Source of the DNA: Dendrobates tinctorius
Taxonomy: Eukaryota
Reading direction: 5' to 3'
Assembly: GCF_039654945.1 (NCBI RefSeq)
Contig: NW_027361761.1
Location: 22,134,001-22,198,000, forward strand
Length of the DNA stretch: 64,000 nucleotides
This document shows positions 1 to 36,273 of this stretch, in pieces. A program made the translations under genes and the position numbers. How positions within the stretch are numbered: the first letter of the stretch is position 1; each line of letters starts with the position of its first letter. Under the pieces are notes generated by a model that saw nothing but the letters and a program-made list of their open reading frames with translations, had not been told where the DNA came from and did no database searches.

Positions 1-651
1 TTTACAGTGCATGAATACTACTGGGCATTATACAAATAGGGGGACCAACATCATATATAATATTTAGTAGTGTTTTCAAGCCTTATCTAGCAAGTTTATG
101 GCCAAAAGCTACATATCACTAATTTTTTGGTATCACACTTCCCATACATTAAAAAGACATAAATAGTTAAAAACAAGCAAGATGGCAACACTTACATGTA
201 TAAAGAGTGAAACAGGTCCCCACCGCCCCAACGCACGTTTCGTATTAAAAACTTCTTTACACGCGTCCTATATTTTTATGGGTTATACATCTTAGTGGTT
301 ATTTTATAACCAATTTTTGTTTATTAGTTCTTTGAGTTAAATACCCATTTTATTTCATTGGGCTTATTTTGTGTTTAATAGCATATAGCTCTTCAGGTTG
401 GCTATTTTATATAATGTATCATACAAAGCTACACAATAAAGTCTTATGATATCATATTTTATGGTATTACCATATCAGAGTCCGGGCATTGTCAAAACCA
501 ATTGGCTGTGCTGGTATAGGGGAAAGGCCTCTTATCTCAGACTCTGGAATCCTATAAGTAAATTCTAAAAAAGGCATATAATAGAAAGAATAAGAAGGCA
601 GGCATTATGGAGAAAAAAAAATGTATTCGTACAATATATTTGGGTGCTTAA

Positions 652-915
652 AAGAGGAGCTGTCACCAGGTGACAAGTGTCCAGTTTGTGCTCTTATTTT
701 ATTCCCGCTGCTCCCCTGATAGTGGCCGATTTTGAATCTTTTTAATTCTGCCATAGGATTCCAGAGATATGGACATTTGTATTTAGTGCAAATCTTTGGG
801 ATCTTTATCAAGGGGGCAGTGTACACAGAGAAACAATGCGGAGCAGCCTAAAGACCCACCCACGAGGAGAATCCTGTGAGAATTGCCCCCATGTAAAGAC
901 CTTAAGAATTAGCAC

Positions 916-946
<31 letters not shown>

Positions 947-1382
947 GGTCCTTGTCTCTTGAACAGTATAATAAAATAAAAATTTTGGGATCTTTACAAG
1001 GGGGAGGTGTACTCAGAGTAAGAATGCAGAGCCAGCTGAAAAACCCACCCACGAGGAGAATCCTGTGAGCCCCAACGCCTTAAAAAGACCTTAAGAATTA
1101 GCACTAAAAAAGGTCCATATCTCTTCAACTGTAACCTACAATAAAAATGTTGGGATCTTTACAAGGGAGAGGTGCACTCAGTAATAAGGCAGAGTAACCT
1201 AAAGATCCACCCACGAGGAGAATTCTCTGAGCACCATCCCCTGTAAAGACCTTAAGAATTAGCACTGAAAAAAAAGTCCATGTCTCTTGCACAGTAACAT
1301 AAAGACTGAAATATTCAGGGGGGGGGCAGTATAAATGAAATAAGAGCAAAAACTGGAGACTTAACTTGATGACAGGTTTTCT
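652..1382. mobile_element. Non-autonomous TTAA-target DNA transposon (T2-MITE/Kolobok-like) with three internal copies of a ~160-190 bp unit
   Basis: TTAA at 648-651 and 1383-1386; degenerate TIRs AAGAGGAGCTGTCA / TGACAGGTTTTCT; CCACCCACGAGGAGAAT recurs at ~856, ~1045 and ~1207. Confidence 0.55.
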
Positions 1383-1422
1383 TTAAGAAGAAAATACTGT
1401 CATGGGTGTCCTTGGGAAACCT

Positions 1423-2735
1423 AGAATCATAGAGTCATAGAATTGTAGAGTTGGAAGGGACCTCCTGGGCCATCTGGTCCAACCCCCTGCTCAAAGCAGG
1501 ATTCTCTAAATCATCCCAGACAGATTTCTGTCCAGCCTCTGTTTGAAGACTTCTATTGAAGGAGAGCTCACCACTTCTCGTGGCAGCCTGTTCCACTCAT
1601 TGATCACTCTGTTAAAAAGTTTTTTCTAATATCTAATCTGTGTCTCCTCCCATTCAGTTTCATCCCATTGCTTCTAGTCTTTCCTTGTGCAAATGAGAAG
1701 AAAGATGGTCCTTCTACAATGTGACAGCCCTTGAGATATTTGTAGACAGCAATTAAGTCTCCTCTCAGTCTTCTCTTCTGCAAGCTAAGCATTCCCAAAT
1801 CCTGCAACCTTTCCTCATAAGACAGGGTTTGCAGACCGGTCACCATTCTGGTCGGTCTTTTCTGAACTTGCTCCAGTTTGTTGATGTCTTTTTTTAAAAT
1901 GTGGCGCCCAAAACTGGACACAGTATTCCAGATGAGGTCTGACCAAAGAGGAGTAGAGGGAAATAATGACTTCACGTGATCTAGACTGCATGCTTCTGTT
2001 AATACATCCTAGAATTGCTATTGCCTTTTTTGCTGCTGCATCACACTGTTGACTCATATTCAGTCTGTGATGTATTAGTATACCCAAGTCTTTTTCACAT
2101 GTGCTGTTGCTTAGTCCTATTCCTCCCACTCTGTATATACTTCTTTCATTTTTATTGCCCAGATATAGTACTTTGCATTTTTCCCTGTTAAAAACCATTC
2201 TGTTAGTTGCTGCCCACTTCTCCAGTTTATTTATATCTTTTTGAATCCTCTCTCTCTCTTCTCTAGTATTAGCTATCCCTCCTAGCTTTGTGTCATCAGC
2301 AAATTTAATCAGTTTACCCTCAATTCCTTCATCTAAATCATTGATAAAGATGTTGAACAATACAGGGCCCAGGACAGAGCCCTGTGGTACCCCACTTGAG
2401 ACATTCTTCCATCTGGATGTGCAGCCATTTACGACCACTCTTTGGGTCCGATCACTAAGCCAGTTATGAATCCACCTAACAGTTGCCTTGTCCATTCCAT
2501 ACTTAGCCATTTTCTCAATAAGGATTGTGTGAGATACTTTGTCAAATGCTTTGCTGAAGTCAAGACATACTATATCTTCAGCATTTCCCGGATCCACCCA
2601 ATCAGTGATTCCGTCACAGAAGGAAATTAAGTTAGTCTGACATGACTTATTAGTTACAAACCCATGCTGACTCTGTTTAATCACTTCATTCTTATCCAGG
2701 TACTGACATACATGTTGTTTAATAATTTGTTCAAT
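1423..2735 (-). mobile_element. 5'-truncated CR1 LINE (RT domain, 3' UTR and (ATTCTATG)n-type tail), frameshifted
   Basis: Peptides [37 protein letters not shown]; 3' tail reads AGAATCATAGAGTCATAGAAT on + strand from 1423; possible 4-bp TSD ACCT at 1419-1422 and 2736-2739. Confidence 0.93.
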
Positions 2736-2737
2736 AC

Positions 2738-2927
2738 CTTTAGCTGGATAGTAGGGAGTGAGTTGGTCTCCAAAATTTTCCTTGAATGAACCCCGTTCTA
2801 CACCAGATGGAGGCATATACCAGGAGTGGGGATAGGTTTCATTAGGATTGGACTTTCCATCATTTATATCTTTGGGATCAGTGTAAATGATCACTCCAAC
2901 AACTCCATATTTGGCAGCATTTATTGC
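2738..2927 (-). CDS. NAALADL1: NAALADL1 exon 5 ([18 protein letters not shown]...[11 protein letters not shown])
   Basis: Acceptor ttttcag; donor G|gtattg; 190 nt; PA-domain sequence. Confidence 0.88.
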
Positions 2928-3359
2928 CTGAAAATCCATTAATAAAATAATTATTTAAGATTTATAGAATAGGATTCACATTCCCAACCCGATCCATACT
3001 AGTAAAAGAGAGCCTAGAGATTGTTTCCTATCACCCCATTCATTTCCCTGTGGACGGAATACTGACGGAGATAAAAATTCTGCTCGAACAGAGGCTGATG
3101 CTGCTGTAATCACAGGACTTTATCTTCTATAATTCCCATACAGACAGCTAGTCGTTCAATATTGTGGTTATTTTATCTCTCCCAATCTTTATTCATTTTT
3201 CTCCTCCGACAGAACTGAGTATCTATAATAACTCAAATCGCTTCTTACTATGTCCTATATGAGTAATAATGGAGTATATAGATGGCGAGAGAGTCAGAGT
3301 CATCTTTGTATATTCTTAGATTAAAGTTATATTCTACGTAAACTTTAGATATAGCTCAC

Positions 3360-3479
3360 CTTATTAACTCTGCCTATCCCTCCGTATCGTACAATCGCAA
3401 TGGTGCCGTTCAGATTTGTTATATTAGCGAGGTGCTGAAAATCACTTATCCTGCCAAAATTTGCAAATACGAGGTTTCC
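3360..3479 (-). CDS. NAALADL1: NAALADL1 exon 4 (GNLVFANFG...RYGGIGRVNK)
   Basis: Acceptor ttcttcag; donor gtgagc; 120 nt, phase 0/0. Confidence 0.9.
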
Positions 3480-3653
3480 CTGAAGAATAAAAATTAAGAC
3501 ATAACTCAATGAAAAATGAAGAAATATTTGTACAGCTCTGTATCTCCATACAAATAAACCTTGTGTAGTCTGATCCTCTAACCATGCATTATTCTGCCAC
3601 CTTTTATAATGCATGTAAGATGCCCAATAGGTGAACGCTAATTCTAAGCATAC

Positions 3654-3775
3654 CTTAACGGTACCATTAGGTGCGTATGCAAGAAACGGCTGGAGGATGT
3701 TTGGGTCTTTTTGGTCGTCAGTGAGTTGAGCCTCAGTTTTGTTTGACTCAAACTTGATGTCACCTTCCGGACTCA
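3654..3775 (-). CDS. NAALADL1: NAALADL1 exon 3 (SPEGDIKF...QPFLAYAPNGTVK)
   Basis: Acceptor tttacag; donor gtatgc; 122 nt. Confidence 0.9.
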
Positions 3776-4298
3776 CTGTAAAAAAAAAATTAAAAAATAA
3801 GGGTAAAAGATACACCACAAACCTAACGAACACGTCTCTAACCCACATGATAAATATTTCATTAGGGTACCTCCATGTACTTTATCCCAAAAAACTACCC
3901 CCCCCCAAAAAAAAATCCAATACAAAAACCAATCCACCAAACAATTATCCCCTATCCAGCGCTGATCTAAAGCAAATGCTTACAATTATGCACAGAAATG
4001 TAGTATTATAGACACTAAAATATAAATAAATAAAAAATAAATATGTATAAAAAAATATATAGAAATATATAATAACAAAATATAAAATTATATAAGAGTA
4101 AATATATATAAAATTAAAATAAGTGGAAAAAAAAAAAACTATAAAAAGTTACGACCCTCGTCATGTGGAAAAAAAAAAAAACAGTAAAAAACCGTACTGT
4201 GTTTTGATGGCCAAAATTAGTCACGTTCATAAGAGACAATATCTATAGCAATCTTGAGTCTCCCTTTATGTGTCATACATATAAACGGTGTCACTTAC

Positions 4299-4471
4299 AC
4301 ACTCTGACGTTGTTTGGATTATTTTCATCTGGAAACGATAAGAAGACATTATATCGTTCTTCCTTGGCTTCATCCAGACCAAAAGTTGGGTCCTTCCAGC
4401 GAGACAGCAGGAGCTGCACCAACACATCATCCACCTCACTCGTGGCCACGTGGGGCTTATTAGACAGGGTT
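4299..4471 (-). CDS. NAALADL1: NAALADL1 exon 2 (TLSNKPHVATSEVDD...PNNVRV)
   Basis: Acceptor ttcttcag; donor gtaagt; 173 nt; translated by hand because it is not in the ORF track. Confidence 0.9.
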
Positions 4472-4499
4472 CTGAAGAATAAGAGGAGAAAATTGTGAT

Positions 4500-5182
4500 T
4501 GTAAGGGGAAATATAATATTAGGTTAAGTCTGACATTCATATGATTAACTCTGCACAAAGGGTCAAAGATCGATGAACTCTTACTTCAAGTCAGGACTCT
4601 AAGAGGAACTCAAAACCAAGGGCGATATCGCTGGGACTACCACAATGGTCATTCCCGATTCCTCGGTCCAGTGAGGTTGACCTTCAGAGGAAGGGCAGAT
4701 GGTCCTATGAAGCCAAGCTCATTTACTATAAGGGGGGGGGGTGGATTGAAGAAAATGACCTAGTCAATATCCAATGTGCTCGCCTCCTTATTGGCCCACA
4801 GTTACAGACCTACAATTTTCCTATTAAAATTTAACACCGACCAGGAAACTTGGGGGTCAGCCAAGCCAAGCCATAAACCTTCCCTACGCCCAAGGAAACA
4901 AAAGACCAACTTTAGATAGAAACGTTTCGATTTTTGTATTATTTCTCCTATTTTATAACTGTTTACACATTGGTGTTGCCTTATTTTCTGCCGTTTAGTC
5001 ATTTCTAACACTGTACTTTTATATTAAAGCTTAATCCGGGGTGTGTGGACGGGTTTAGGGTGTAATTTATACTCACTTTCCAGCCTATAACAGAAGTTGA
5101 GTGCATGACCCAGTGAAGGGAGATAAATTAACCCTTGTGGGGGCACCCAACGCCACGTCCTGAGAACTGTGTCTGTGACAAC
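4500..5182. mobile_element. Possible solo LTR in NAALADL1 intron 1
   Basis: TGTAAGG...GACAACA termini and an ATTAAA signal; only an imperfect GAT(T) flank duplication. Confidence 0.35.
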
Positions 5183-5367
5183 AGATTTATCCATATAACA
5201 CAACTACATAGCGTCACGTTAACACTTCAAAAAGACTTTTACCATAACTGTCAAGACTACACAATAGGGAATGCAAAAAGGTATATCTTTATAAAAGGAA
5301 GAGCTGGATGAGCAGCTGATATACTCCTGTAGAGACACATATTTTGGGTGTAACAATAGGATCGATC

Positions 5368-8300
5368 AACTACTATAATACTGCCTCCTATGTACAAGAA
5401 TATAACTACTATAATACTGCTCCCTATGTACAAGAATACAACTACTATAATACTGCCCCTATGTACAAGAATATAACTACTATAATACTGCCCCTATGTA
5501 CAAGAATATAACTACTATAATACTGCCCCTATGTACAAGAATATAACTACTATAATACTACCACTATGTACAAGAATATAACTACTATAATACTGCTCCT
5601 ATGTACAAGAATATACCTACTATAATACTGCTCCTATATGCAAGAATATAACTACTATAATACTGCTCCTATATACAAGAATATAACTACTATAATACTG
5701 CCCCTATGTACAGTAATATAGTTACTATAATACTGCCCCTATGTACAAGAAAATAACTACTATAATACTGCTCCTATGTACAAGAATATAGCTACAATAA
5801 TACTGCTCCTATGAACAAGAATATAACTACTATAATATTGCTCCTATGTACAAGACTATATCTACTATAATACTGCCCTTATGTACAAGAATATAACTAC
5901 TATGATACTGCCCCTATGTACAAGAATATAACTACTATAATACTGCCCCTATGTACAAGAATATAACGACTATAATACTGCTCCTATGTACAAGAATATA
6001 ACTACTATAATACTGCCCCTATGTACAAGAATATAACTAATATAATATTGCCCCTATGTACAAGAATATAACTACTATAATACTGTACCTATGTAAAAGA
6101 ACATAACTACTATAATACTGCCCCCTATGTACAAGAATATAACTACTATAATACTGCTCCCTATGTAGAATATAACTACTATAATACTGCCTCTATGTAC
6201 AAGAATATAACTACTATAATACTGCCCCTATGTACAAGAATATAACTACTATAATACTGCTCCCTATGTAGAAGAATATAACTACTATAATACTGCCTCT
6301 ATGTACAAGAATATAACTACTATAATACTGCTCCCTATGTAGAAGAATATAACTACTATAATACTGCCTCTATGTACAAGAATATAACTACTATAATACT
6401 GCCCCCTATGTACAAGAATATAACTACTATAATACTGCTCCCTATGTAGAAGAATATAACTACTATAATACTGCCTCTATGTACAAGAATATAACTACTA
6501 TAATACTGCCCCTATGTACAAGAATATAACTACTATAAAACTGCTCCTATGTACAAGAATAAAACTACTATAATACTGCCCCTTATATACAAGAATATAA
6601 CTACTATAATACTGCCACTATATACAAGAATATAACTACTATAATACTGCTCCTATGTACAAGAATATAACTATGATACTGCCCCTATATACAAGAATAT
6701 AACTACTATAATATTGCCCCATATACAAGAATATGACTACTATAATACTGCCCCCTATGTACAAGAATATAACTACTATAATACTGCTCCCTATGTAGAA
6801 GAATATAACTACTATAATACTGCCTCTATGTACAAGAATATAACTACTATAATACTGCTCCTATGTACAAGAATATAACTACTATAATACTGCCCCTATA
6901 TACAAGAATATAACTACTATAATACTGCCCCATATACAAGAAAATAACTACTATAATACTGCCCCTATGTACAAGATTATAACTACTATAATACTGCCCC
7001 TATGTACAAGAATATAACTACTAAAATACTGCTCCCATTTAAAAGAATATAACTACTATAATACTGCCCCCTATGTACAAGAATATAACTACTATAATAC
7101 TGCTCCCTATGTAGAAGAATATAACTACTATACTATTGCCTCTACGTACAAGAATATAACTACTATAATACTGCCCCTATGTACAAGAATATAACTACTA
7201 TAATACTGCTCCTATGTACAAGAATATAACTACCATAATACTGCCCCCTATATACAAGAATATAACTTAAAATATTGCTCCTATGTACAAGAATATAACT
7301 ACTATAATACTGACTCTATGTAAAAGAATATAACTACTATAACACTGCTCCTATATACAAGAATATAACTACTATAATACTGTCTCTATGTACAAGAATA
7401 TAATTACTATAATACTGCACCTATGTACAAGAATATAACTACTATAATACTGCTCCTATGTACAAGAATATAACTACTATAATACTGCTCCTATGTACAA
7501 GAATATAACTACTATAATACTGCCCCTATGTACAAGAATATAACTACTATAATACTGCACCTATGTACAAGAATATAACTACTATAATACTGCTCCTATG
7601 TACAAGAATAAAACTACTATAATACTGCCCCTTATAGACAAGAATATAACTACTATAATACTGCCCCTATGTACAAGAAAATAACTACTATAATACTGCC
7701 CCTATGTACAAGAATATAACTACTATAATACTGTTCCCAATGTAGAAGAATATAACTACTATAATACTGCCCCTATGTACAAGAATATAACTACTATAAT
7801 ACTGCTCCTATGTACAAGAATATAACTACTATAATACTGTCCCTTATATACAAGAATATAACTACTATAATACTGCTCCTATGTACAAGAATATAACTAC
7901 TATGATACTGCCCCTATATACAAGAATATGACTACTATAATACTGCCCCATATACAAGAATATGACTACTATAATACTGCTCCTATGTACAAGAATATAA
8001 CTACTATAATACTGCCCCTATATACAAGAATATAACTACTATAATACTGCCCCATATACAAGAATATAACTACTAAAATACTGCCCCCATTTAAAAGAAT
8101 ATAACTACTATAATACTGCCCCCTATGTACAAGAATATAACTACTATAATACTGCTCCCTATGTAGAAGAATATAACTACTATACTATTGCCTCTACGTA
8201 CAAGAATATAACTACTATAATACTGCCCCTATGTACAAGAATATAACTACTATAATACTGCTCCTATGTACAAGAATATAACTACTATAATACTGCCCCC

Positions 8301-9495
8301 TATATACAAGAATATAACTATTAAAATATTGCTCCTATGTACAAGAATATAACTACTATAATACTGACTCTATGTACAAGAATATAACTACTATAACATT
8401 GCTCCTATATACAAGAATATAACTACTATAATACTGCTCCTATGTACAAGAATATAACTACTATAATACTGCCCCTATGTACAAGAATATAACTACTGTA
8501 ATACTGCTCCTATGTACAAGAATATAACTACTATAATACTGCCCCTATGTACAAGAATATAACTACTATAATACTGCTCCCCATGTACAAGAATATAACT
8601 ACTATAATACTGCTCCCCATGTACAAGAATATAACTACTATAATACTGCTCCTATGTACAAGAATATAACTACTATAATATTGTCCTCTATGTACAAAAA
8701 TATAACTACTATAATACTGCTCCTATGTACAAGAATATAACTACTATAATACTGCCCCCTATGTACAAGAATATAACTACTATAATACTGCCCCTATGTA
8801 CAAGAATATAACTACTATAATACTGCTCCCCATGTACAAGAATATAACTACTATAATACTGCTCCTATGTACAAGAATATAACTACTATAATATTGTCCT
8901 CTATGCACAAGAATATAACTACTATAATATTGTCCTCTATGCACAAGAATATAACTACTATAATACTGCCCCTATGTACAAGAATATAACTACTATAATA
9001 CTGCTCCTATGTACAAGAATATAACTACTATAATACTGCCCCTATGTACAAGAATATAACTACTATAATACTGCTCCTATGTACAAGAATATAACTACTA
9101 TAATACTGCTCCTATGTACAAGAATATAACTACTATAATACTGCTCCTATGTACAAGAATATAACTACTATAATACTGCTCCTATGTACAAGAATATAAC
9201 TACTATAATACTGCCCCTATGTACAAGAATATAACTACTATAATACTGCACCTATGTACAAGAATATAACTACTATAATACTGCCCCTATGTACAAGAAT
9301 ATAACTACTATAATACTGCCTCTATGTACAAGAATATAACTACTATAATACTGCCTCTATGTACAAGAATATAACTACTATAATACTGCACCTATGTACA
9401 AGAATATAACTACTATAATGCTGCCCCCTGTGTACAAGAATATAACTACTCTAATGCTGCCCCCTATGTACAAGAATATAACTACTCTAATACTG
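5368..9495. repeat. 35-bp AT-rich minisatellite (AACTACTATAATACTGCYCCTATGTACAAGAATAT), roughly 115-120 copies
   Basis: Tandem periodicity is directly visible. Confidence 0.97.
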
Positions 9496-10113
9496 AAAAA
9501 CAATCTTGCTACTGTAGCAATGCTCCGGTTTTAATATAATATGTTTTGGGATTTACAGTATATAAGTTAAAGGAAATCTGTCAGCACAGAATTACTGTTT
9601 TACCCATGCTCAAGCGCTCAGTGCACCCTTGGTGTGTCAAACAGTTCAGAGCTCCTTCCCACCTACCCATTTTTTAACATAAAACAATAGTAATGACTAA
9701 AGCAACCTTGTAATATATCTTACTATTAATTCTCAATTCAAAGGTAAAATCTGTATTCAGTGAAGACAGCGTTTCCGAATACTGAGATTGGAGATGACAG
9801 TTGGTGATTATAATATTTTATGAAGAGGAAGGAGCTACAAGCAGAAACAGACATTCTGCTGCAAGTTCCATAGAACTTTATGAGAACCAACTGATATCTA
9901 TCTCAATAATGGGAGAATCTCACTGAAAACAAATTTGACCCATGAATTAAGAATTTTGAGAATCAATGATCAGTCCAGGAGGAGAAAGAAGCAGATTTCT
10001 CTGATAATATTAGTTTCTTATTTTTTGTTTTCTATTGATTTATGCTATGAAAAAAAATAAATACATACAACGGTTAATTGTGAAAGCGGATTTATAGCAT
10101 CTGTAGAATTAAT

Positions 10114-10318
10114 GGCTACATATATGCTAAAAACATCTGAGAAGGATGGTCCGAATATGGACTGCAATGTCTGCACCGGTCGTAGGTCTACTGACCTAAA
10201 CTCAAGAGCCTCATATATGCCCTATGAGGTCAAATTTGAGTCAGTTGGCCCATAGTCAGATAGGACATTGCAGTCCGTACTTGGACCATGAATGTCTGAT
10301 GTGTGAAGTCAGCCTTAA
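10114..10318. mobile_element. Small palindromic MITE
   Basis: Inverted arms TGGTCCGAATATGGACTGCAATGTC / GACATTGCAGTCCGTACTTGGACCA. Confidence 0.5.
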
Positions 10319-11351
10319 GCTATTTGTTCACAGTCATTTCGCTGAATTTCCAGAGCAGAATTTCACAGTTTTTGAAACATTTTGAGATTTGGAGAGTTTC
10401 CGTTCCAAAATCTTCTACTTGCGTTTTATTGGATGGGGGGGGGGCTTTTTTGGTGCTGTGTTACAAAACAAAAGTAGACTGCTGTAATTTAGGCAAATCA
10501 ATGCAAACCGTGGATAAACCACACGAGCACAACTGTCTACATTTAGGTTGTCGCCGTAAGGTGACGAGACTCGAAAGGACATATTCCAAAAAACAAATCA
10601 CAAAAAGAAGGTACCTGTTTTACCAGCTCCAACGCTCAACGTCAAAGCTCAGCAAAATGCAATCGGCCCTCACGATAAATGCAGAGGCAGCACAGGTGCA
10701 AGATACAGATGAAACAACCACTCGCATGCCAATCATTCATCAGTGTTTCGCACCTTGGCTACCACCGCCTTTTTCATGGGGGCTGGCCACATATTGCTGT
10801 GCTTTGGTAAATATGGCTGCCTTCTCTTTGTTATGTTTTTTTTTTATATGACGTGTCCTTCAGGATAAGAAAATTAATATAATGGAATTAAATTATATTT
10901 TTAGCTGCTGAAAGTATAGAAGACACCACGTTTGGGTAGTCAACAGATGCCCTTTGGCTTTGGCATTGTGCTCTTTGTTGGCCAAATCACATCCAACTCA
11001 AGGCCAAAGATCCAGGAGGTTCCAACATCTGGCAACAGTTCCTTTGCGGTCACAATTCATTGCCGTGTATAGATGTATATTTTTCTGCCATTCTTTTCAG
11101 CTTGAATGTCTGCAGATCAGTGTCACAAGATGACCAGCTTCATATGGAAATTGTTTCGCCTAACTGCACATGACACTCTTTTCTTGACATCTCAAGCTAA
11201 GAATGGAGGTAATGAAGGAGACATCAGTTGGCAGTCTGCAACTGCAATCTTCGTTTCACGATCAAAGTCACCTTAGAAACAAATACTTATTGTACAGAAT
11301 AGAAAAATATGGCTGATGTCTGCAAGATACAGTGCCACACTACAGTAAATG

Positions 11352-11980
11352 TATCACGCTTTTCGGTGGCACACGTGGTTTGTGGACCCACCGTGCCGGT
11401 TCTGCCTAGCAAGGGGCATATCTAAGCGGCTACCAGGTTTTCACTGGAGCCCCTGTTGGTTTAGACAGACTGGGCTGCAGGTATCTGCCAGGTACCACTC
11501 CCAGGGAGACCTGCAGCTACCAAACCCGAGTGGTCGGGTTCTCTGGACGGGAAGACATGGCCAGAGCCACAGCCAAGCCGGAATCAGAGACAGACCGTAC
11601 AGACAACTGGGATCTTGACGACAGGTTCTTGTTCACACAAGCAGTTATTAGGAATTAGTTCAGGAGCTGGCTGCACTAGGACCAAAGGTTCGGGTACAGG
11701 TACCGGTACCAACCACTCGGATTCAGGATTAAGATACGGATACCGCCGATTCGGCCAGAGGATAAAGAACACACTATACTATACTAATGGAATGACACAG
11801 GAAAGCCTCCAAGCTGCTGTGTTCGGGCATTTTACTATGCGAGTGTGCTTTTAAAGGGGGGGAGATGCACCACCGGAACACAGTGCCGGCGTGCACAGGA
11901 GAAGTAGGACCAACATGAGAACGCCACTGTGGCCGGAGTGGTGAGTATGTCGGTATCTCCTCATGGCCACGGACGTTATA
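11352..11980. mobile_element. Solo-LTR-like insert with TATCACG...CGTTATA termini
   Basis: Exact 5-bp TSD AAATG at 11347-11351 and 11981-11985; 7-bp imperfect terminal inverted repeat. Confidence 0.65.
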
Positions 11981-12340
11981 AAATGGAGCGTAGTTGCAAC
12001 GCAAAACACAGGCTTTGGACAGGAGTGGCCCTGTTTTTAGAAGTAGTTAAGTTCTTCCAATCCTGGGCTATCCATTTAAGCTTAGATACTTGTACATTGA
12101 AGTTCTCAGAATTGGAGGAATCAACTTCACCCAATGTCAACCACACAGGACCAAGCATTTACATTGTTACTCTTGGCTAAAAATTACTGCTCAGGGTTTC
12201 TTAAAAAAAAAAAAAAAAAAAAGACAAAACTCTGCTTATTTGCTTGTCTGATGGAGCAAACAATATAAAGGGGAGGTTAAGGGAAGTAAAAATTACAGAA
12301 CTATTTCCGTTCTATGCCAAGTGAGGCTAATGGGTCTCAC

Positions 12341-12537
12341 CTCAGGTTCTCCTTGATCTTCTCGTTATCCACCTCCTTCATGAATTGTTGGATAAACTCT
12401 TCATCGAGATCTTGAGCGAGATTCTTCACCCATTCTGGATCGGCACCACTCGATATACCAAAATGACCAATCAGCAGTCCGATGGCCAATATGGCCAAAG
12501 CCCCAAAAGAAAATCCCAACACCTTCCACCAATTCAT
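12341..12537 (-). CDS. NAALADL1: NAALADL1 exon 1 (MNWWKVLGFSFGALAILAIGLLIGHFGI...KIKENLR), with N-terminal signal anchor
   Basis: ATG in ACCATG context; hydrophobic TM ending LIGHFGI; donor AG|gtgag in phase with exon 2. Confidence 0.9.
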
Positions 12538-12589
12538 GGTCCCTCAGCACCCGAGATGCCTCAGAGATTGCGTTTCACTCAATGTGGTA

Positions 12590-12760
12590 ACCGTTACCCT
12601 TTACACTTGCACTTCACTCTTTATGGTTACTCTTTACACTTTAGATAAGACGACACTAATAACATGGTTAACGATTATCAGAATTAAATCATGGGTCACA
12701 ATCTAGCGGGATAATGGAAGAGATATTGAGCTAATTATTCCAAGAATCAAGTCCATAAAA
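12590..12760 (-). promoter_or_regulatory. Putative NAALADL1 proximal promoter with CDX, GATA, HNF1 and HNF4-like motifs
   Basis: TTTATGG 12620-12626; AGATAAG 12643-12649; GGTTAACGATTATC 12666-12679; CAAGTCCA 12748-12755; CCATAAA 12753-12759. Confidence 0.45.
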
Positions 12761-13797: not shown

Positions 13798-13817
13798 TTA
13801 CAGAGATGTAAACTAAT

Positions 13818-14851
13818 TTAGGGAGGGACTACAGCCTGCAGCACCCTTAGCCCGAAGGTGAGATCTGAGGAGGCACCCATGTCTAACCGATAGTGGTTAA
13901 AAAAGGTGGAAGGAGATGACCAGGTGGCCGCCTTACATATGTGGTCAATTGATACTCCCGATCTCTCTGCCCAGGATGATGCCATGGCACGAGTGGAATG
14001 CGCCCTCAGGTTCTGTGGAGCCGGACCGCCACCTGCTGTGTAGGCAAGAGAGATAGCCTCCCTAATCCACCTTGCTAACGTGCGCTTTGATACTCTACAC
14101 CCTTTCCTGGGACCTTGGAAGGATAAAAATAATGCGTTCTCCTTCCTGCAAGGATCCGTGGCTGCTAAATATTTAAGTAGGCATCTCTTAACATCTAGAG
14201 CCTGAAGTTTTTGTTCTTTAGGATTGGTTGGATTAGGGGGAAGGAAGGCAGAACTATTTCTTGTGTCTTATGAAAATGAGATGCTACCTTGGGAAGGTAT
14301 GCCGGGTCTGGCCTTAGGATTACTCTATCCTGCAAGAATTCTGTGTAAGGGGGCAATCTGGAAAGTGCCTGTATGTCGCCTATTCTACGTGCAGATGTTA
14401 TTGCTACCAAAAAGGCTGTCTTAAGTGATATCATTTTTAGTGAAGCAGAATCCAGAGGTTCAAACGTTTTTTCTGTCATGGCTGTCAGGACTAAATTTAA
14501 GTCCCAAGGTATACACCTATCTTTGAGTATGGGTCTCGATCTAGTAACTGCCTTAATGAATCTCGCCACCCAATGGTTACCGGCAATGTCGCATGCAAAT
14601 AGGGCCCCTAAAGCTGAAACCTGTACTTTCAATGTACTAGTGGAAAGGCCCAACTCGAAACCCCTCTGGAGGAATTCTAGAATCTGTTTTACCGGTATTC
14701 CATCCCTGATATTAAACTCAAAGGTGCACAGGAATCGCCTCCAGGTTCTAGCATAGATACCTGTGGTGGTTTGTTTCCTACTTTTTAGGAGTGTATCGAT
14801 TACATTTTTTGAGAAACTTCTATCCCTCAATAGTGTCCTCTCAAACACCAT
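13818..14851 (-). pseudogene. DIRS tyrosine recombinase, frameshifted near 14200-14240
   Basis: TSARRIGD (R), RAHSTR (HxxR), KAATWSS and FFNHYRLD (Y); C-terminal part translated by hand. Confidence 0.88.
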
Positions 14852-16668
14852 GCCAGTCCCGCTACTTGTGGGTGGTTGACTGGCCCCTGGTAGAGGAGAT
14901 CTGGAAGGTTCGGCAGTACCCACGGATCTCTTACTGACATGGTCCTCAACCATGCAAACCAGGTCCTTCTGGGCCAGAAGGGGGCAATCAATATGACTCT
15001 TACCCCGTCTTCCCTGATCTTCCTCACTACCAGAGGTAGAAGGTTCAAAGGTGGTAAAGCATAAGCAAGCGAGAAGTCCCATTTTATTAGGAGGGCGTCC
15101 ACGGCCAGTGGATTTTCCCTGGGATTTAGGGAACAGAAAGGTTTTTCCTTCCTGTTTTCTTTGGTGGAATTTGCGGACAATCTGGTTGTAGATGTCTGAG
15201 TTTAAAGCCCATTCTCCCTGCTTTAGGGCCCTGCGGCTTAGAAAGTCTGCCTTCATGTTGTCTTTTCCGCTGATGTGGAGCGCGGTTAAAGATAGAAAAC
15301 TTTTCTCTGCTATGTGAAGGAGACGTTCCGTTATCCGCATCAGGGCGTTGGAGCAGGTTCCACATTGGTGGTTGACATAGGCTACCGCTACCTGGTTGTC
15401 TGAGAGTATCCTCACATGATGGCCCTGTAGATACATAATGAGTTTTTTAACGGCCAATTCAATCGCCAGCAGCTCCCTCTGGTTAGATGAGGTCTCAGCA
15501 TCGGAGTCCCACTGTCCCTGTACCACTATGTCCCCCATATGGGCGCCCCAACCCCAAGGACTAGCGTCTGTGGTTATTACGCGGGTTATCTGCATCACCC
15601 AGGGCACCCCCGAGGCTAAATTTCCGACATCGAGCCACCACCTAAGAGATGTAATAGTTGAGGGGTTTAGCAATACTTGACCCTGCAAGAAGCCCTCTAA
15701 GGTTCTGCTATTAACCAGGACGTCTTTCTGAAGGGCCCTAGTGTGGAATTGTGCCCACTTGACCGCTGGGATACATGAGGATAGGGAACCTAACAGGGAC
15801 ATGGCCTGCCTCAGGGTCATGGAGGGTCTATCGATTGCCCGAAGAACCTGCTGCTGTATCTGCTGTAATTTATCTAATGGTAACAGACACTGCTGAGTTT
15901 CTGAATTTAACAGCAAGCCTAGAAACTTCTGGACCTTTAAGGGCTGAAATCGGGATTTCTCGTAATTTATTATCCATCCGAGGTTCTCTAATCTGGACTT
16001 AGCTTTTTCTATCTGAGACAATGGTCCACTGAATTTCCCACAATCAAAAAATCATCTAAGTATGGGATAATTAAGATGTCAACTTCCCGTAAATGAGCCA
16101 TAACTTCGGCCACTATTTTTGTTAATACCCGGGGCGCTGCTGAGAGACCAAAGGGAAGGGCTCTATATTGATAATGACGGATTATACCGTCTATTGATAC
16201 CGCCACTCTCAGGAACTGCTGGAAATCTGCGTGGATGGGCACATGATAGTATGCGTCTTTCAAGTCCACGACCGCCATAAAACACCCTTCAAACAGCATC
16301 TTTATTGCAGAATTAATGGACTGCATTTTAAAGGTGCGTTTAACCAAAAATTCATTAAGGAAACGTAAATTAATAATTGTTCTGAATGTTTTATCCGGTT
16401 TTTGGATTAGGAATAAGGGAGAGTAGAACCCTCTTCCTCTCTCAGATTCTGGAACCTCTATCAGAACGTTTTTCAGGCACAGGTTCAAGACCTCTGCTTC
16501 TAAAGCCGCTTGCTCGAGGGGTGAAGACCTTAAGGGTGTTGGTTTAAAGGTATCCCGTGGGACTTGAGTGAACTCCAACCTGAGTCCGGTGGATATCACA
16601 TTCCGCACCCAGTCACTATTGGTGACCTGTAGCCATGCTGGGAGGAAGGATGACAGTCTACCCCCCAC
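14827..16668 (-). pseudogene. DIRS RT / RNase H / adenine-methyltransferase-like ORF, frameshifted
   Basis: DLKDAYYH, LPFGL, PYLDD (RT); TTDASPWGWGA, NQRELLA, ILSDN (RNase H); AYALPP...LIAPFWPRRTWF (MT-like). Confidence 0.9.
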
Positions 16669-16676
16669 GGGAATTG

Positions 16677-17878
16677 CTAGTCATTGGTTCTTTTTCGCTC
16701 TCTCGACGAGCGTCTGAACATAAAGCCCGTACCTCTTCTCCTTCTATCCTCCCATCTGGGACGGTCTCTATTAGGTGAAGGGTTACGCCTTCTCCCTTGA
16801 CCGAATCTTCTATTAAACGGACGTCGGTAAGATGCGGACCAAAGATTTGGGAATTTTTTCTTATCATCCCCGGTCTTCTCCAGCAGTTCGTCCAGGACTG
16901 CTCCGAATAAATATTCCCCCTCACACGGGATAGTACAGAGTTTCGCCCTGGACTGAATATCTCCCGGCCAGCACTTTAGCCACAGGGCTCTCCGAGCCGC
17001 ATTAGAGAGTCCTGCTGCCCTGGTGGCCATTCTGACTGCATCAGCCGAGGCATCTGCTAGGAAGGCTGCGCCATCCTGGATTATTGGTAGGGCCCCAAGG
17101 ATTGCCTGTCTAAATGTTCCTTGTTTTAACTGCGACTCTAACTGGTCCAACCAGACCATCATGGAACTGGCCGTGCGAGTTGATGCTACTGCTGGTCTTA
17201 AGGAACCGGCTGCCATCTCCCAGGTATTCTTAAGGAAAGTATCTGCCTTCCTGTCTAGAGGATCTTTAAGGGACCCCATGTCCTCAAAGGGTAGTGAGGA
17301 TCTTTTCGATGCTTTCGCAATAGCTGCATCTAATTTGGGGGCCTTGTTCCAAGTACTCATTGCTGAATCGTCAAAGGGATATCTCCGCTTGAGGGCTGGT
17401 GGTAGCGACCCTCTTTTATCTGGCTTTTTCCACTCTCTGCGGATGAGATCCTGAATCTTTTCGTCTAGTGGGAAGACTCTACGCTTCCTCTGCTCCAGCC
17501 ACCTCCATTGTCCCTCTGACTGCTTTTACTAACTTGTCTACTCAGTCAAGCGGCAGGCAAAACCGACCAGAGTCCTCTTCTTCTGAGGAGGACGAGGGAA
17601 ATGAAATATGGGAGTCCTTACTTCTCCTCCACTCTGTCGAGGAATCCGACTCCACCGGGTCCTCACCCCTTAAACTTTCTGGTTGGGACAGGGATTTTTA
17701 GGGTTTCCTTCATCTCTGCCCTTACTATATCCCTTAAAAACGCCGCTACTGCGGGCAACTCCTCCGCCACTATCTGCTGGATACAGGGGGGACACAACTT
17801 TTTGGGGCATGAGTCTGGTAACGGGCATGCACAGAGTGCGCATTCCCTGTGCTAGGTTTTAGTCGTAGCTTTCTTCCT
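16677..17878 (-). pseudogene. DIRS ORF1 (gag-like) with an N-terminal CxxC...CxxC motif, disrupted
   Basis: ECALCACPLPDSCPKKLCPPC; PKLDAAIA..LKDPLDRKAD..ARRALWLKCW..GEYLFG, typical of vertebrate DIRS ORF1. Confidence 0.8.
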
Positions 17879-30133: not shown

Positions 30134-30304
30134 NNNNNNNNNNNNNNNNNNNNNNNNNNNNNNNNNNNNNNNNNNNNNNNNNNNNNNNNNNNNNNNNNNN
30201 NNNNNNNNNNNNNNNNNNNNNNNNNNNNNNNNNNNNNNNNNNNNNNNNNNNNNNNNNNNNNNNNNNNNNNNNNNNNNNNNNNNNNNNNNNNNNNNNNNNN
30301 NNNN
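30134..30304. other. Assembly gap (171 N) in THUMPD2 intron 7
   Basis: Run of N. Confidence 1.
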
Positions 30305-32200: not shown

Positions 32201-35200
32201 TTAAGTTATAGGGGACGGAAAGGCCTTGTCCCATTTGTTCCATTTTTTATAAAATTTTCCAAACTGATTATTAATCAGAGCAAAATTCAGTTCATGTGCT
32301 CTATGTTGCTGGACTAGGTGGAAGATAACCTCTGGATTTGGGAGTATTTTGTTTTTCCAGTGGAAAGTGATGAAATTTTTTGCTACAAGACAAAGATGAA
32401 TGAATATGGGTTGGAGTGCCAAGTCTAGTTCGTCTAGGTTAAGGGAAAGAAGGGCCATTTGAGGGGTGAGGGTTAAAGTTTTGTTAGAGAGTTTATTGAG
32501 AGAGGTAGAGATCCAAGACCAGACTGTTTTGACTCTGGGACATTCCCAAAACATATGCAATAGGTCTCCCTTGAAGCCGCAGTCTCTCCAGCAAAGGGGT
32601 GAGGATGAGTTTGAAGGACCGAAGTGTGCTAATTTTGCCGGAGTAAGGTACCAATTACTAATAGTTTTAAAGTATGTCTCTTGAAGTGGAAATGAGATTG
32701 TGGAGTTGTACGTTTTGGAGAGAGCCTCTTCCCATTGTTCAGGAGAAAAGGTGGATTTTAGGGTTTTTTCCCAGGTAACCATATAAGGGCTTTTTGACAA
32801 ACTATCGTCGTTGTTGAAGGAGTCATAGAGAAAGCCATGACTCCAAAAGATTTTATGATGAGGATTGAGTAAGACTTTTATGGAAGCGTGAGTAAAGTTC
32901 ATTTTTGACTAAAGAAAAGCGAGGACATTATCTTTTAAGAGGATGAATTCTAAGAATAAGGAATGAGGGACGTTAAAGTTTTTTCTTAGCGATGCAAAGT
33001 CTACGAAATTGGAGCCGTTGTGGATATCTCCCAATTTTGTGATTTTTAATTCTGGCCAAATAGTAGGGAGGGTTACGTTAGAGAGGCTAAAAATAAGAGT
33101 AAGGGGTATGTTTTTTAGAATGGGGAATTTGTGTGTCCGTCTGCTTGGTTTGGAGAATTTACACCAAGCTTGAGCAATGGACAGGAATAGAGGGTGAGCG
33201 TTAAAGTTAGGAAGATGATTTGAGATTGCTTGAGTGATGATGTTGCTTAACTGTTTACCATTGTTTAAAAATAGTTCCAAGTCAAACCAGGCCGGAGGTT
33301 CATGTTGGGAAATCCAATGGACACTTTGTTTAATCAGAAGAGTTTGATAATGGGCGATAATGTTGGGAAGGCCCATCCCCCCATTCCCTTTTTTCCTGTG
33401 TAATGATGAGGAAGAAGTCCTAGATTTTTTTCCTCCCCACAGGAAGGTTTTGAACAAAGATTGGATGTTTGTCAGAAGTATGACCGGGATGGGCAGAGGG
33501 AGGCATCGGAGAACATATAGAATTTTTGGAAGGATGTGTGTTTTAAGGATATAATTTTTTCCCCACCAAGAGAGATTTTTCTCTTTAAAGATTAAGCAAT
33601 CTTTGCTTATTGAATCTGTCAAATTTCTCAGATTTATCTTCCCCATAAGGTGGAGATTATTACAGAGGGAAATACCTAGGTAAGGAATCTCTCTGTTGCA
33701 CCAGTTAAGGGATGTTTTTTCCTTTATTGCATCTGTTTGTTTAGTGTCAAGATTAAGGGGAAGGATGTTTGATTTTGACTGGTTGATTTTGTAGTTAGAT
33801 AGGTCCGAGAATTTGTCTAGTTCATTGAAAACCTCAGATGAAGAGTTTTGGGGGTCAGTTAAAGTCAAAATGATGTCATCTGCGAATAGGCTGATTTTGT
33901 GTTCCTTGTGTTGGGTATGGATTCCTTTAATTTTGGCATTGTTACGAATGTGTTCGGCTAAGGGTTCGAGAGCCAAGTTGAAAAGTAGGGGTGATAGAGG
34001 GCACCCCTGTCTGGTGCCGTTCGAGATAGCAAAGGGGTTTGAGATATGATTGTTGGAGGTTATTTTCGCGCTTGGGTTTGAGTATAGTGCCATAATAGTG
34101 GTCACTAATTTTTGATTGAATCCAAATTTGAAAAGAGTGTGTCTAAGGAAGTCCCAATTTATGCGGTCAAAGGCCTTCTCGGCATCTAGTGATATTAAAG
34201 TTGTTGGAGTTTTAGTTGAGTTGGCGTACCTAATAACGTTTATTAATCTCCTTGTGGCGTCTGCGGGTTGTCTCCCATGGGTGAATCCCATTTGGTCATT
34301 GGCCAGAAGATACGGGAGAAAGTTACTCAACCTATTGGCTATTATTTTGGAGAACAGTTTTATGTCTGTGTTGATGAGGGAAATGGGGCGATAATTGGTC
34401 ATTAGTTCAGGGTTACCTTTAGGTTTTGGAATCAGGACAATCGAGGCCTCAAGCATTTCCTTTGGAAATAGCCCCCGAACTGCGGCAAAGTTGAATACTT
34501 CTGCAAGGTGAGGAGATAAGAGTTTACTGAAGGTTTTGTAGTATGAATTGTTGAAGCCGTCGGGGCCTGGGGATTTGTGGAGGGGGAATTTGTTAATAGT
34601 ATCTTCTATTTCAATAGGGGAGAAAGGGGCAGACATAAAGGCCAGGTCGTCGGTTGATAAAGAGGGAAGATTGATTGAGTTGAGGTAGTCATTGATATCT
34701 TGCGAGTTAGGTTGGGAAGAGGAAGAAGTTGGTTTGAGGTTATATAATTTTTGGTAAAATTGGGCAAATTCGTTAACTATGTCTTGGGGGTGGGATAGAA
34801 TGCCGTTTTTGGAGGTGGCTACTATTCTGTTGTGAACTCTTTTATTCTTTACCCTATTTGACATGAAAGAAGTTGGTTTATTTAGTGCAGAATAATATTT
34901 AAATTTTGAGGATTTTACTACAGCATCATAAGGAGTGCTGATAAGTGATTTGAGCTTTTGTCTCAGAGTCAAGAGTTCAAGTTGGAGAGAGGAAGATTGG
35001 GAATGATGGGCTAATAATTCGGATTCTTTATTGTGGATTTTGGTTTGGACTTCCAAGATATTCCTTCTATTCTCTTTTTTAATTTTTGATGAAATATCAA
35101 TGAAAATACCTCTAAGTACAGCCTTGTGGGTGCACCAATTATTGAAAGGGTTGGTTGAGGAGGATTTGTTATCTAGGAAGAATTGGGAAATGGCCTTTTC

Positions 35201-35977
35201 TATTTTTTGCTTGTGAAAGGTGTCGTGAAGGATGTTGGAGTTACATCTCCACATATTAGCTTTCTTAAGAGGGGGACCTAATTGAATAAGACTGTGTACT
35301 GGTGAATGATCAGAGAAGGACTTTTTGCCTATAGAAACCTCCTGGAGTCTGGGGAGAGTGAACACGTCTGTAAGGATTAGATCAATCCGGGATGCGGACT
35401 GATGTACGTCTGAAAAGAAAGTGTACTCTCTTGACGACGTGTTTAGACACCTGAAGACGTCGAAAAGTTCGTTTTTAAAGATCCACTGATTTAGGTTATT
35501 TGAGGGACTACGGGTGTGTGAGGAAGAGTCAACAGTGCTATCCGGTGTAATGTTGAAATCTCCAGCAAGAATTAGTTCACCTTTTCTAACCTTGGAAATG
35601 ATTTTCAGGAGCTTGTTTAGAAAGCGAAGCTGGTGCCGGTTGGGGGCGTATAGGTTAACTAGGGTACAGATTTGTTCATTAATTTTGCAGATCAAGATGA
35701 GGTATCTACCGTTAGTATCTTTATGTTCATCTATGATTTCAAAGGGAGTTGAAGAACTTATCATAGTGATTACACCTGCTTTTTTCTGAGGGCCACAAGA
35801 TGTAAAAATGTGGGGGAACTTTTTGTGGTGGAGGTGTGGATGGTTGTTAATCATGAACTTAGACTCCTGAATACATGCAATGTCAAGGTGTGATCTTTCT
35901 AGTTCCCTCCAGAGGGAGAACCTCTTCCATGGGCTATTTAGGCCTTTCACATTGTAGGAGGTGAGTTTAAAACTCAT
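32201..35977 (-). pseudogene. L1 ORF2 (APE endonuclease, RT, CCHC) interrupted by one in-frame TAG at 32909-32911
   Basis: YNVKGLN, GDFN, SDH, PGPDG, QGCPLSP, FADD, CWRDC..HMFWEC; the 1022-aa and 233-aa ORFs share a frame. Confidence 0.93.
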
Positions 35978-36273
35978 GATAGATCTAATTTGGATTAGGT
36001 ATGGGGATGATCAGTAAGGAGCTATGTAGCTTGGAACCTGGAGCAAATGAATACAATGATAGAGAATAAACCAATACTCGAATACAATCGGTATGTATCG
36101 GCAAAAGAAACAACCTATAAAGAGAAAAGTAGATTGTGAACAATAAACAGTAAACATAAGCAGAACACTAAATAATGAACTGCTACTAAGCACTCGGGGT
36201 ATTACACATGGACGGGTAATAGTGAAACCCAATGTAAACGTGAAAAGAACCTAGTAGACATTAAAGTTATTTA

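What the first reader, a model, noticed from the sequence alone, without database searches (positions are those of the whole stretch)
1419..2927. CR1 LINE inserted in the NAALADL1 exon-5 splice donor, with its RT in frame with the exon
Seen: exon 5 ends ...YYPAK G|GT, and CR1 sequence (ATTGAACAAATTATTAAAC = EQIIKQH) starts about 2 nt into the intron. The exon therefore reads without a stop through ~290 aa of RT, including FADD (the 374-aa ORF). AGGT flanks both CR1 ends (2736-2739 and 1419-1422). Inference: the target was the AG|GT donor itself, the old donor was G|GTTTCC, and CR1 now supplies positions +3 to +6 (G|GTATTG). Three outcomes are possible: normal splicing from the rebuilt donor, use of the displaced donor at 1420 (CR1 exonised), or read-through to a membrane-anchored PA-domain::RT chimera lacking the peptidase Zn ligands. 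In-frame fusion has a 1-in-3 chance prior, so it is not evidence of selection.
Basis: partly seen in the sequence, partly recalled or inferred. Interest (0 to 1): 0.7.

Follow-up and report, generated by a model that had tools for sequence, protein, structure and literature searches.

The report
Dead CR1 in NAALADL1 splice donor
A broken jumping-gene copy (CR1 LINE) landed three to four bases inside an intron of a poison frog's NAALADL1 peptidase gene, but the messenger RNA is still spliced normally, so the long exon-plus-reverse-transcriptase reading frame is most likely a chance by-product.

Summary
On the minus strand, NAALADL1 exon 5 (2927-2738) ends ...YYPAK G|GT. A 5'-truncated CR1 copy (2734-1422, 1313 nt) follows almost at once. 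It carries an RT with FADD, a 3' hairpin and ATTCTATG octamers. The exon frame runs open through it, giving the 374-aa ORF.

- RNA-type contigs from two runs of the same species join exons 2-3-4-5-6 with no mismatches. They use the donor at 2738|2737 and the exon-6 acceptor at 565|564, so the whole CR1 is spliced out.
- No listed contig supports a chimera or use of the displaced donor copy. Contigs cannot exclude a rare isoform.
- Contigs of other CR1 copies stop matching at 2734. CR1 therefore supplies intron positions +4 to +6. The +3 A is not the CR1 letter.
- The proposed old donor G|GTTTCC scores about 0 bits. Insertion without a duplication gives an old donor GTAGGT, GTAAGG or GTATGG (8-11 bits). 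That fits the GT[A/G]A donors of other vertebrates.
- The 4-nt AGGT "duplication" has about an 8% chance expectation.

A relative 1.7% diverged (organism B) shares the insertion. A relative about 5% diverged (organism C) departs from the window exactly at the CR1 edge, so its site is probably empty. This is an ordinary, tolerated intronic LINE insertion in an unusual position.

The parts
2738..2927 (-). NAALADL1 exon 5 (190 nt, ends in phase 1: ...YYPAK + G)
   Evidence: Peptide matches human NAALADL1 4TWE residues 205-266 at E 1.3e-27. RNA contigs of X6 and X8 cover it with 0 mismatches, with joints on both sides.
2732..2740 (-). Present 5' splice site AAG|GTATTG. Positions -3 to +3 are not CR1-derived; +4 to +6 (TTG) are CR1 letters.
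   Evidence: Joint 564->2738 with ends GT..AG on the minus strand. Weight-matrix score 4.6 bits. CR1 homology ends at 2734 (table 7).
1422..2734 (-). 5'-truncated CR1 LINE copy, 1313 nt, in the same orientation as the gene
   Evidence: Contig depth jumps to 1e3-1e6 between 1387 and 2796 in all four runs. Loose ends of other copies lie at 2734 (1, 31 and 56 contigs) and at 1422 (109 contigs). No second copy in the window.
2145..2734 (-). Reverse-transcriptase domain remnant; FADD at 2303-2292
   Evidence: Pfam RVT_1, E 3.1e-30, profile positions 20-194 of 205. FADD located.
1815..2939 (-). 374-aa ORF: 4 codons of intron 4, then exon 5, then GTA, then the CR1 RT frame, ending at TGA 1817-1815
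1886..1901 (-). First frame break of the CR1 ORF2 remnant, in a T4A7 run; the conserved C-terminal part continues in another frame (ORF 1975..1604)
   Evidence: ORF list. Length difference at 1889 in part of the other copies (table 4). Located.
1596..1612 (-). Second frame break of the ORF2 remnant
   Evidence: Other copies carry two more letters at 1606-1608, with loose ends at 1607 and 1609 (tables 4 and 7).
1448..1484 (-). CR1 3'-UTR hairpin (GGTTGGACC ... TCCAAC)
   Evidence: The helix is present in the minimum-free-energy and centroid folds. The whole 99-nt stretch is not more stable than its shuffles (z -0.08).
1422..1443 (-). CR1 3' octamer microsatellite: ATTCTATG, ACTCTATG, ATTCTA
   Evidence: The motif ATTCTRTG is described as typical of CR1 in PMC8665684.
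2736..2739 (-). Upstream AGGT (last two exon bases plus the donor GT)
1419..1422 (-). Downstream AGGT. Its A is also the last letter that matches other CR1 copies. TAG|GTTTCC is the displaced 'donor' copy.
   Evidence: Weight-matrix score -1.4 bits. No listed joint uses it.
471..564 (-). NAALADL1 exon 6 (94 nt: EFTYRIPESEIRGLSPIPAQPIGFDNARTLI)
   Evidence: RNA contigs join it to exon 5. A loose end at 471 runs on into downstream exons outside the window. Translation.
3360..3479 (-). Exon 4
   Evidence: Joints in RNA contigs.
3654..3775 (-). Exon 3
   Evidence: Joints in RNA contigs.
4299..4473 (-). Exon 2
   Evidence: Joints in RNA contigs. The 29 loose letters beyond 4473 match the end of exon 1.
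12340..12537 (-). Exon 1 (start codon and type-II membrane anchor)
   Evidence: ORF; translation.

Best explanation
A 5'-truncated, already defective CR1 LINE copy (2734-1422) integrated in sense orientation 3-4 nt into intron 5 of NAALADL1. It replaced the 3' half of the 5' splice-site hexamer. This probably happened in the common ancestor of organism A (the source of the window) and organism B, after their split from organism C. The exon side (AAG) and GTA survived, and CR1 now supplies TTG. The rebuilt donor AAG|GTATTG is weaker than the old one but is still the site used. The mRNA joins exon 5 to exon 6 and removes the CR1 with the rest of the 2.2-kb intron. The 374-aa exon::RT ORF exists only because the truncation point happened to fall in the exon's frame. 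It is a feature of the unspliced DNA, not a product for which there is evidence.

Shown: the position and limits of the CR1, the open frame, normal splicing as the assembled isoform, and presence of the insertion in B.
Inferred: an empty site in C, insertion without a real target-site duplication, and an old donor of the type GTA(A/G/T)GG.
For: Splicing. X6 contig of 2315 nt (depth 76.6) and X8 contig of 1672 nt (depth 33.3) have 0 mismatches. They cover 4299-4473, 3653-3775, 3359-3478, 2738-2926 and 564-471. The joint 564->2738 skips 2173 nt with GT..AG ends. The X6 contig runs about 1.6 kb beyond exon 6, as a full-length NAALADL1 mRNA would.

CR1 limits (table 7). Other copies stop matching at 2734 and at 1422.

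CR1 identity. RVT_1 hit, hairpin, ATTCTRTG octamers, and very high copy number in A, B and C (table 2).

Relatives (table 8). The B contig (414 nt, 7 differences) runs from intron 4 through exon 5 and 26 nt into the CR1. The C contig (782 nt) matches 3122-2734 at about 94% and then continues for 398 letters that are not this CR1. Rows with the same contig depth (21.1) appear at 1268-1307 and 1036-1105, which is the geometry of an empty site.

Old donor. Weight-matrix scores, GT[A/G]A tails in other vertebrates, and GTAAGT in another frog. One-to-several-bp overlaps at CR1 3' junctions are reported in the literature (PMC6007223).
Against: The runs were laid as assembled contigs, which drop rare variants and give no quantitative levels, so a minor read-through or exonised isoform cannot be excluded. 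The kind and tissue of X6 and X8 are not on record; they are taken as RNA because their contigs lack four introns. The B contig reaches only 26-29 letters past the junction, below the tool's own 31-letter bridging rule. The joint of the C contig across the empty site was not among the rows shown, so its letters are unknown. The C piece ends at 2734, which fits GTAT.. better than GTAA.. or GTAG... The donor scores come from an approximate frequency table recalled from memory, not from MaxEntScan.
Confidence: 0.85

Rival explanations
1. The CR1 integrated with a 4-bp AGGT target-site duplication centred on the donor. The old donor was AAG|GTTTCC, and CR1 (2735-1423) improved it by supplying A at +3.
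For: AGGT is present at both edges. Staggered cuts and short duplications are known for LINEs, and short overlaps at the 3' junction are reported for CR1 (PMC6007223).
Against: The A at 2735 is not the CR1 letter; other copies stop matching at 2734, so an extra untemplated base or a later mutation must be assumed. GTTTCC scores 0.06 bits with T at +3 and no G at +5. Nearly all other vertebrate exon-5 donors seen have GT[A/G]A. The chance of such a 4-mer match is about 8%. The C contig matches the window down to 2734, not just to 2736.
Confidence: 0.15
2. A share of transcripts fails to use the weakened donor and reads into the CR1. This would give a truncated membrane-anchored PA-domain::RT-remnant protein, or more likely a transcript ended at an internal poly(A) signal or removed by nonsense-mediated decay, lowering NAALADL1 output in A and B.
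For: The donor lost its likely +5 G and scores 4.6 bits. The frame is open for 308 codons. AATAAA and ATTAAA signals lie in sense orientation at 2231, 2156, 2723, 2681 and 2309. A low-depth unspliced contig covers 561-874 (depth 2.84 against 76.6 for the mRNA), showing that some pre-mRNA is in the library.
Against: No contig reading from exon 5 into the CR1 is among the listed rows. The assembled mRNA is the normal one in both runs. The RT remnant lacks the endonuclease and the start of the RT, so an enzymatic role is implausible. The insertion survived a speciation event, which argues that it does little harm.
Confidence: 0.07
3. Assembly artefact: the CR1 was placed next to the exon by a mis-join through a repeat.
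For: The CR1 family is extremely abundant and young. Many contigs are at least 99% alike, which makes mis-joins possible in principle.
Against: Four runs of the source sample hold 0.86-0.88 of the stretch's sampled words. A contig from a different organism (B) independently carries exon 5, GTA and 26 nt of CR1 in one piece. The spliced RNA joint places exon 6 downstream as assembled.
Confidence: 0.02

Closest known systems
CR1 (chicken repeat 1) LINEs of tetrapods: 5'-truncated genomic copies
   Same: An RT with FADD, a 3'-UTR hairpin followed by ATTCTRTG-type octamers, severe 5' truncation, very high copy number, and no clear target-site duplication.
   Different: Nothing unusual in the element itself. 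Only its position is unusual: it lies inside a 5' splice-site hexamer, in sense orientation and in the exon's frame.
LINE and SINE insertions at or near splice sites (for example, disease-causing L1 or Alu insertions in human genes; from my own knowledge)
   Same: A retroelement lands within a few bases of an exon-intron border and alters the splice-site consensus.
   Different: Such insertions are usually found because they break splicing. Here the normal junction is still the assembled isoform, and the insertion is shared by two species.
Transposon-host gene fusions and exonised transposons (for example SETMAR; from my own knowledge)
   Same: A host exon and a transposon ORF lie in one open frame on the DNA.
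   Different: There is no evidence that the fused frame is transcribed into mature mRNA or kept by selection. The transposon part is a broken fragment.
Human NAALADL1 (PDB 4TWE), an M28 or GCPII-family peptidase
   Same: The exon-5 peptide aligns along its full length with 4TWE residues 205-266 (E 1.3e-27). The type-II membrane-anchor exon and the PA-domain exons come in the same order.
   Different: Only exons 1-6 are in the window. The zinc ligands and the catalytic domain lie outside it and were not examined.

Membership tests
CR1 LINE | Reverse-transcriptase domain | tested here: met
   Pfam RVT_1, E 3.1e-30; FADD at 2303-2292.
CR1 LINE | 3' octamer microsatellite ATTCTRTG | tested here: met
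   ATTCTATG, ACTCTATG, ATTCTA at 1443-1422. Other copies carry further ATTCTATG-type units beyond 1422 (table 7). Motif as described in PMC8665684.
CR1 LINE | Hairpin directly upstream of the microsatellite | tested here: met
   The helix GGUUGGACC/UCCAAC is in the minimum-free-energy and centroid folds. The fold of the whole 99-nt stretch is not more stable than its shuffles, so the support comes from position and sequence, not from energy.
CR1 LINE | Apurinic-type endonuclease and ORF1 | tested here: not met
   Absent from this copy. Homology starts inside the RT at 2734. This is expected for a 5'-truncated copy and does not argue against family membership.
CR1 LINE | RT groups with the CR1 clade in a phylogeny | not tested
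   No tree was built, and the word search was not spent on the RT.
NAALADL1 orthologue | Closer to NAALADL1 than to FOLH1 or NAALAD2 | tested here: met
   Exon 5: E 1.3e-27 to 4TWE against 4e-6 to 7e-6 for GCPIII and GCPII. An expressed paralogue also exists in this species, so one-to-one orthology was not established.
NAALADL1 orthologue | Intact, expressed, normally spliced gene | tested here: met
   A 2315-nt RNA contig with 0 mismatches over exons 1 (its end) to 6, running on beyond. Exons 7 onward lie outside the window.
LINE insertion with target-site duplication | Direct repeat of target sequence at both junctions, single in the empty site | tested here: inconclusive
   AGGT is present at both edges, but chance expectation is about 8%. 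The repeat needs a non-CR1 base at 2735, and the letters of the empty site were not obtained.
Expressed host-transposon chimera | Mature transcripts that continue from the exon into the transposon | tested here: not met
   The listed RNA contigs show only the exon 5-exon 6 joint. Contigs cannot exclude rare forms.

The most novel reading that the evidence does not exclude
By replacing positions +4 to +6 of a strong donor, the CR1 made exon 5 of NAALADL1 leaky in the A and B lineage. A minor read-through transcript would then encode a type-II membrane-anchored PA-domain protein with an RT-remnant tail, or feed nonsense-mediated decay. That would be a lineage-specific, transposon-made change in dosage of a gut peptidase, testable against the sister species with the empty site.
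Probability: 0.06. Interest if true: 0.45.

Novelty: new member of a known kind. Interest (0 to 1): 0.2.

Why it matters
It is a clean natural experiment on 5' splice-site robustness. A LINE replaced half of the donor hexamer of a conserved gene, probably including its +5 G. The junction is nevertheless still the one assembled from RNA, and the insertion outlived a speciation event. With a sister species that seems to keep the empty site, the cost of the weakened donor could be measured directly. Beyond that it is an ordinary intronic CR1 insertion. The long exon::RT frame should not be annotated as a protein.

Tried and rejected
- A search for a second copy of this CR1 in the window, to fix its 5' edge, found none.
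- The word search with the exon-5 ORF aimed to fetch empty-site contigs of close relatives. It returned only 21 short ORFs, the best 80% identical and mostly fish, with no poison-frog contig. One other frog contig was useful as an outgroup donor.
- An exact look-up of the 374-aa ORF found it is not on record.
- A tblastn search for a NAALADL1 paralogue in the window found none. The paralogue seen in RNA lies elsewhere.
- MaxEntScan and SpliceAI are not installed. An approximate weight matrix recalled from memory was used instead and is marked as such.
- Look-ups in the scan's own notes by place, by sequence and by the gene name gave nothing for this locus.
- CR1 exonisation from the displaced donor copy was rejected: it scores -1.4 bits and no listed joint uses it.
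- Misassembly was rejected because an independent contig from organism B carries the junction.
- The RT was not sent to the large protein searches, because the 3' hallmarks already identify the family.

Full report
**What is there.** All features lie on the minus strand. The sequence reads ...CCAGCTAAAG|GTA TTGAACAAATT.... The last exon base is G2738 and the donor GT is at 2737-2736. The ORF 2939..1815 (374 aa) is real. Pfam finds the end of a PA domain (aa 5-51) and RVT_1 (aa 67-265, E 3.1e-30) in it. FADD is at 2303-2292.

The 63-aa exon peptide matches human NAALADL1 (PDB 4TWE, residues 205-266) at E 1.3e-27. It matches GCPII and GCPIII only at about 1e-6, so the gene name is right. The exons were searched one by one.

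**The element is a CR1.** It ends with ATTCTATG ACTCTATG ATTCTA (1443-1422). A GGTTGGACC...TCCAAC hairpin (1484-1448) precedes this and appears in the predicted fold. A hairpin plus an ATTCTRTG octamer microsatellite is the 3' structure described for CR1 (PMC8665684 and PMC4316615). The folding energy of the whole 99-nt stretch is no better than that of its shuffles, so the evidence is the motif and its position.

Earlier notes of this scan call the genome a poison frog rich in CR1. I did not test the species name.

The copy has no endonuclease and no ORF1. The ORF2 remnant changes frame in a T4A7 run (1901-1886) and again near 1607.

**Limits of the CR1.** I laid contigs of four public runs on 400-4600 at 85% likeness.
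- Depth jumps from tens to 1e3-1e6 between about 1387 and 2796 in all runs, so this is a very abundant, young family.
- Contigs of other copies lose their match at 2734 on the 5' side: 1 contig in X6, 31 in X5 and 56 in X9.
- Beyond that point these contigs continue with the upstream RT coding sequence (...SLTSIPGKIF|EQII).
- On the 3' side they lose their match at 1422 (109 contigs in X5) and go on with more octamers.
- The CR1-derived part is therefore 2734-1422 (1313 nt).
- The A at 2735, which is intron position +3, is not the CR1 letter.

**Splicing.** Two small runs of the same organism as the window (X6 and X8: same study, different samples, kind not on record) contain contigs of 2315 and 1672 nt. 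These lie on 4299-4473, 3653-3775, 3359-3478, 2738-2926 and 564-471 with 0 mismatches. All joints have GT..AG ends on the minus strand.
- The joint 564->2738 skips 2173 nt, which is the CR1 and the rest of intron 5.
- The 29 letters beyond 4473 are the end of exon 1.
- The X6 contig continues about 1.6 kb past exon 6.

These are therefore RNA-derived contigs of a normal NAALADL1 mRNA. The rebuilt donor AAG|GTATTG is the one used. No listed joint uses the displaced copy TAG|GTTTCC at 1421|1420, and no listed contig runs from exon 5 into the CR1.

Contigs drop rare variants, so a minor isoform is not excluded. An unspliced contig at 561-874 (depth 2.84 against 76.6) shows that some pre-mRNA is present in the library.

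**The old donor.** Several observations speak against this.
- On an approximate donor weight matrix (frequencies from my memory of published tables), that site scores 0.06 bits.
- The present donor scores 4.6 bits and the gene's other donors score 5.2-10.7 bits.
- If the CR1 went in without a duplication, the old donor was AAG|GTAGGT (10.0 bits), AAG|GTAAGG (11.2 bits) or AAG|GTATGG (about 8.4 bits, estimated from the exon-3 donor score). Which one depends on whether the bases at the edges are counted as CR1 or as target.
- Short ORFs that read through exon 5 in 21 other vertebrates continue almost without exception with codons that imply GT[A/G]A.
- The one other frog contig has AAAA|GTAAGT.
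- A 4-mer shared within 2 nt of both junctions arises by chance about 8% of the time. The donor consensus itself (AG|GTRAGT) resembles such a repeat.
- Overlaps of one to several bases at CR1 3' junctions are reported in the literature (PMC6007223).

I put the duplication model at about 15%.

**Relatives.**
- Organism B (X5). A 414-nt contig covers 3122-2709 with 7 differences and no gaps. It holds intron 4, exon 5, GTA and 26 nt of CR1 in one piece, then ends where the repeat begins. This is below the tool's 31-letter bridging rule. However, 26 matching CR1 letters at the same position are not a chance result, so B has the insertion.
- Organism C (X9). A 782-nt contig matches 3122-2734 (18 differences, 5 gaps). 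It then continues for 398 letters that do not match this CR1.
- Difference rows with the same contig depth (21.1) lie at 1268-1307 and 1036-1105. That fits a contig running from about 1023 to about 1420 and then jumping to 2734, which means an empty site.
- The joint itself was among the rows not shown, so this is inferred.
- In 2709-3122 the distances are A-B 7 and A-C 18 plus gaps. Three of B's differences are shared with C, which fits ((A,B),C).
- The insertion therefore dates to the A+B stem and survived their split.

**Verdict.** The insertion really sits inside the donor hexamer and is in frame. The gene is nevertheless spliced normally, and the ORF is a chance read-through (prior 1 in 3; the other frames stop after 19 and 2 codons). 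The TSD-based reconstruction of the old donor is probably wrong. This is an ordinary kind of event in an unusual position. Its interest is as a natural test of donor robustness, not as a new gene.

**Limits of this work.**
- Organisms and runs are coded.
- The runs were laid as contigs, not raw reads.
- No tissue information was available.
- The N run at 30134-30304 was left alone.

Noticed in passing
window 2739-2774 (loose ends in run X6): A second RNA contig matches only this part of exon 5 and diverges on both sides (...GVERGAYVETFGD...PAK|NFTYRINQND against ours ...GSFKENFGD...PAK|EFTYRIPESE). An expressed NAALADL1 paralogue with the same exon 5/6 border therefore exists elsewhere in this genome. 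It is not in the window.
   Followed up: partly
window 5368-9495: A satellite of 35-bp units, about 117 copies, 91% matches, inside the 7.9-kb intron 1 of NAALADL1. It produces many short 'YNYYNTAP'-type ORFs on both strands.
   Followed up: partly
window 541-822: A high-copy repeat lies directly upstream of the exon-6 acceptor. Contig depth is 383-12,682 in runs X8, X5 and X9, against tens in the neighbouring intron (table 2). It was not classified.
   Followed up: no
window about 800-1340: By eye there are three copies of a unit of about 180 nt (each starting ...AGTGCTAATTCTTAAGGTC...) in intron 5 downstream of the CR1, one with a 30-nt T run. Tandem Repeats Finder at score 100 did not list it.
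   Followed up: partly
window 32201-37005, minus strand: An apparently full-length L1-type LINE. It has an ORF1 with a weak Transposase_22 match (36274-37005) and an uninterrupted 1022-aa ORF2 with endonuclease and RT (32909-35977), followed by a further 233-aa ORF.
   Followed up: partly
window 13800-17360, minus strand: A retroelement with RT (16009-16668) and RNase H (14195-16021). An upstream ORF (16677-17360) matches the Pfam LAP2alpha domain at E 1.6e-12. A short ORF at 13818-13985 looks like the end of a tyrosine recombinase (my reading from memory, DIRS-like).
   Followed up: partly
window 561-874: A low-depth RNA contig (2.84 against 76.6 for the mRNA) with 0 mismatches covers the 3' end of intron 5 and the first 4 nt of exon 6. 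This shows unspliced pre-mRNA in run X6.
   Followed up: no
window 30134-30304: A run of 171 N (gap or masked).
   Followed up: no
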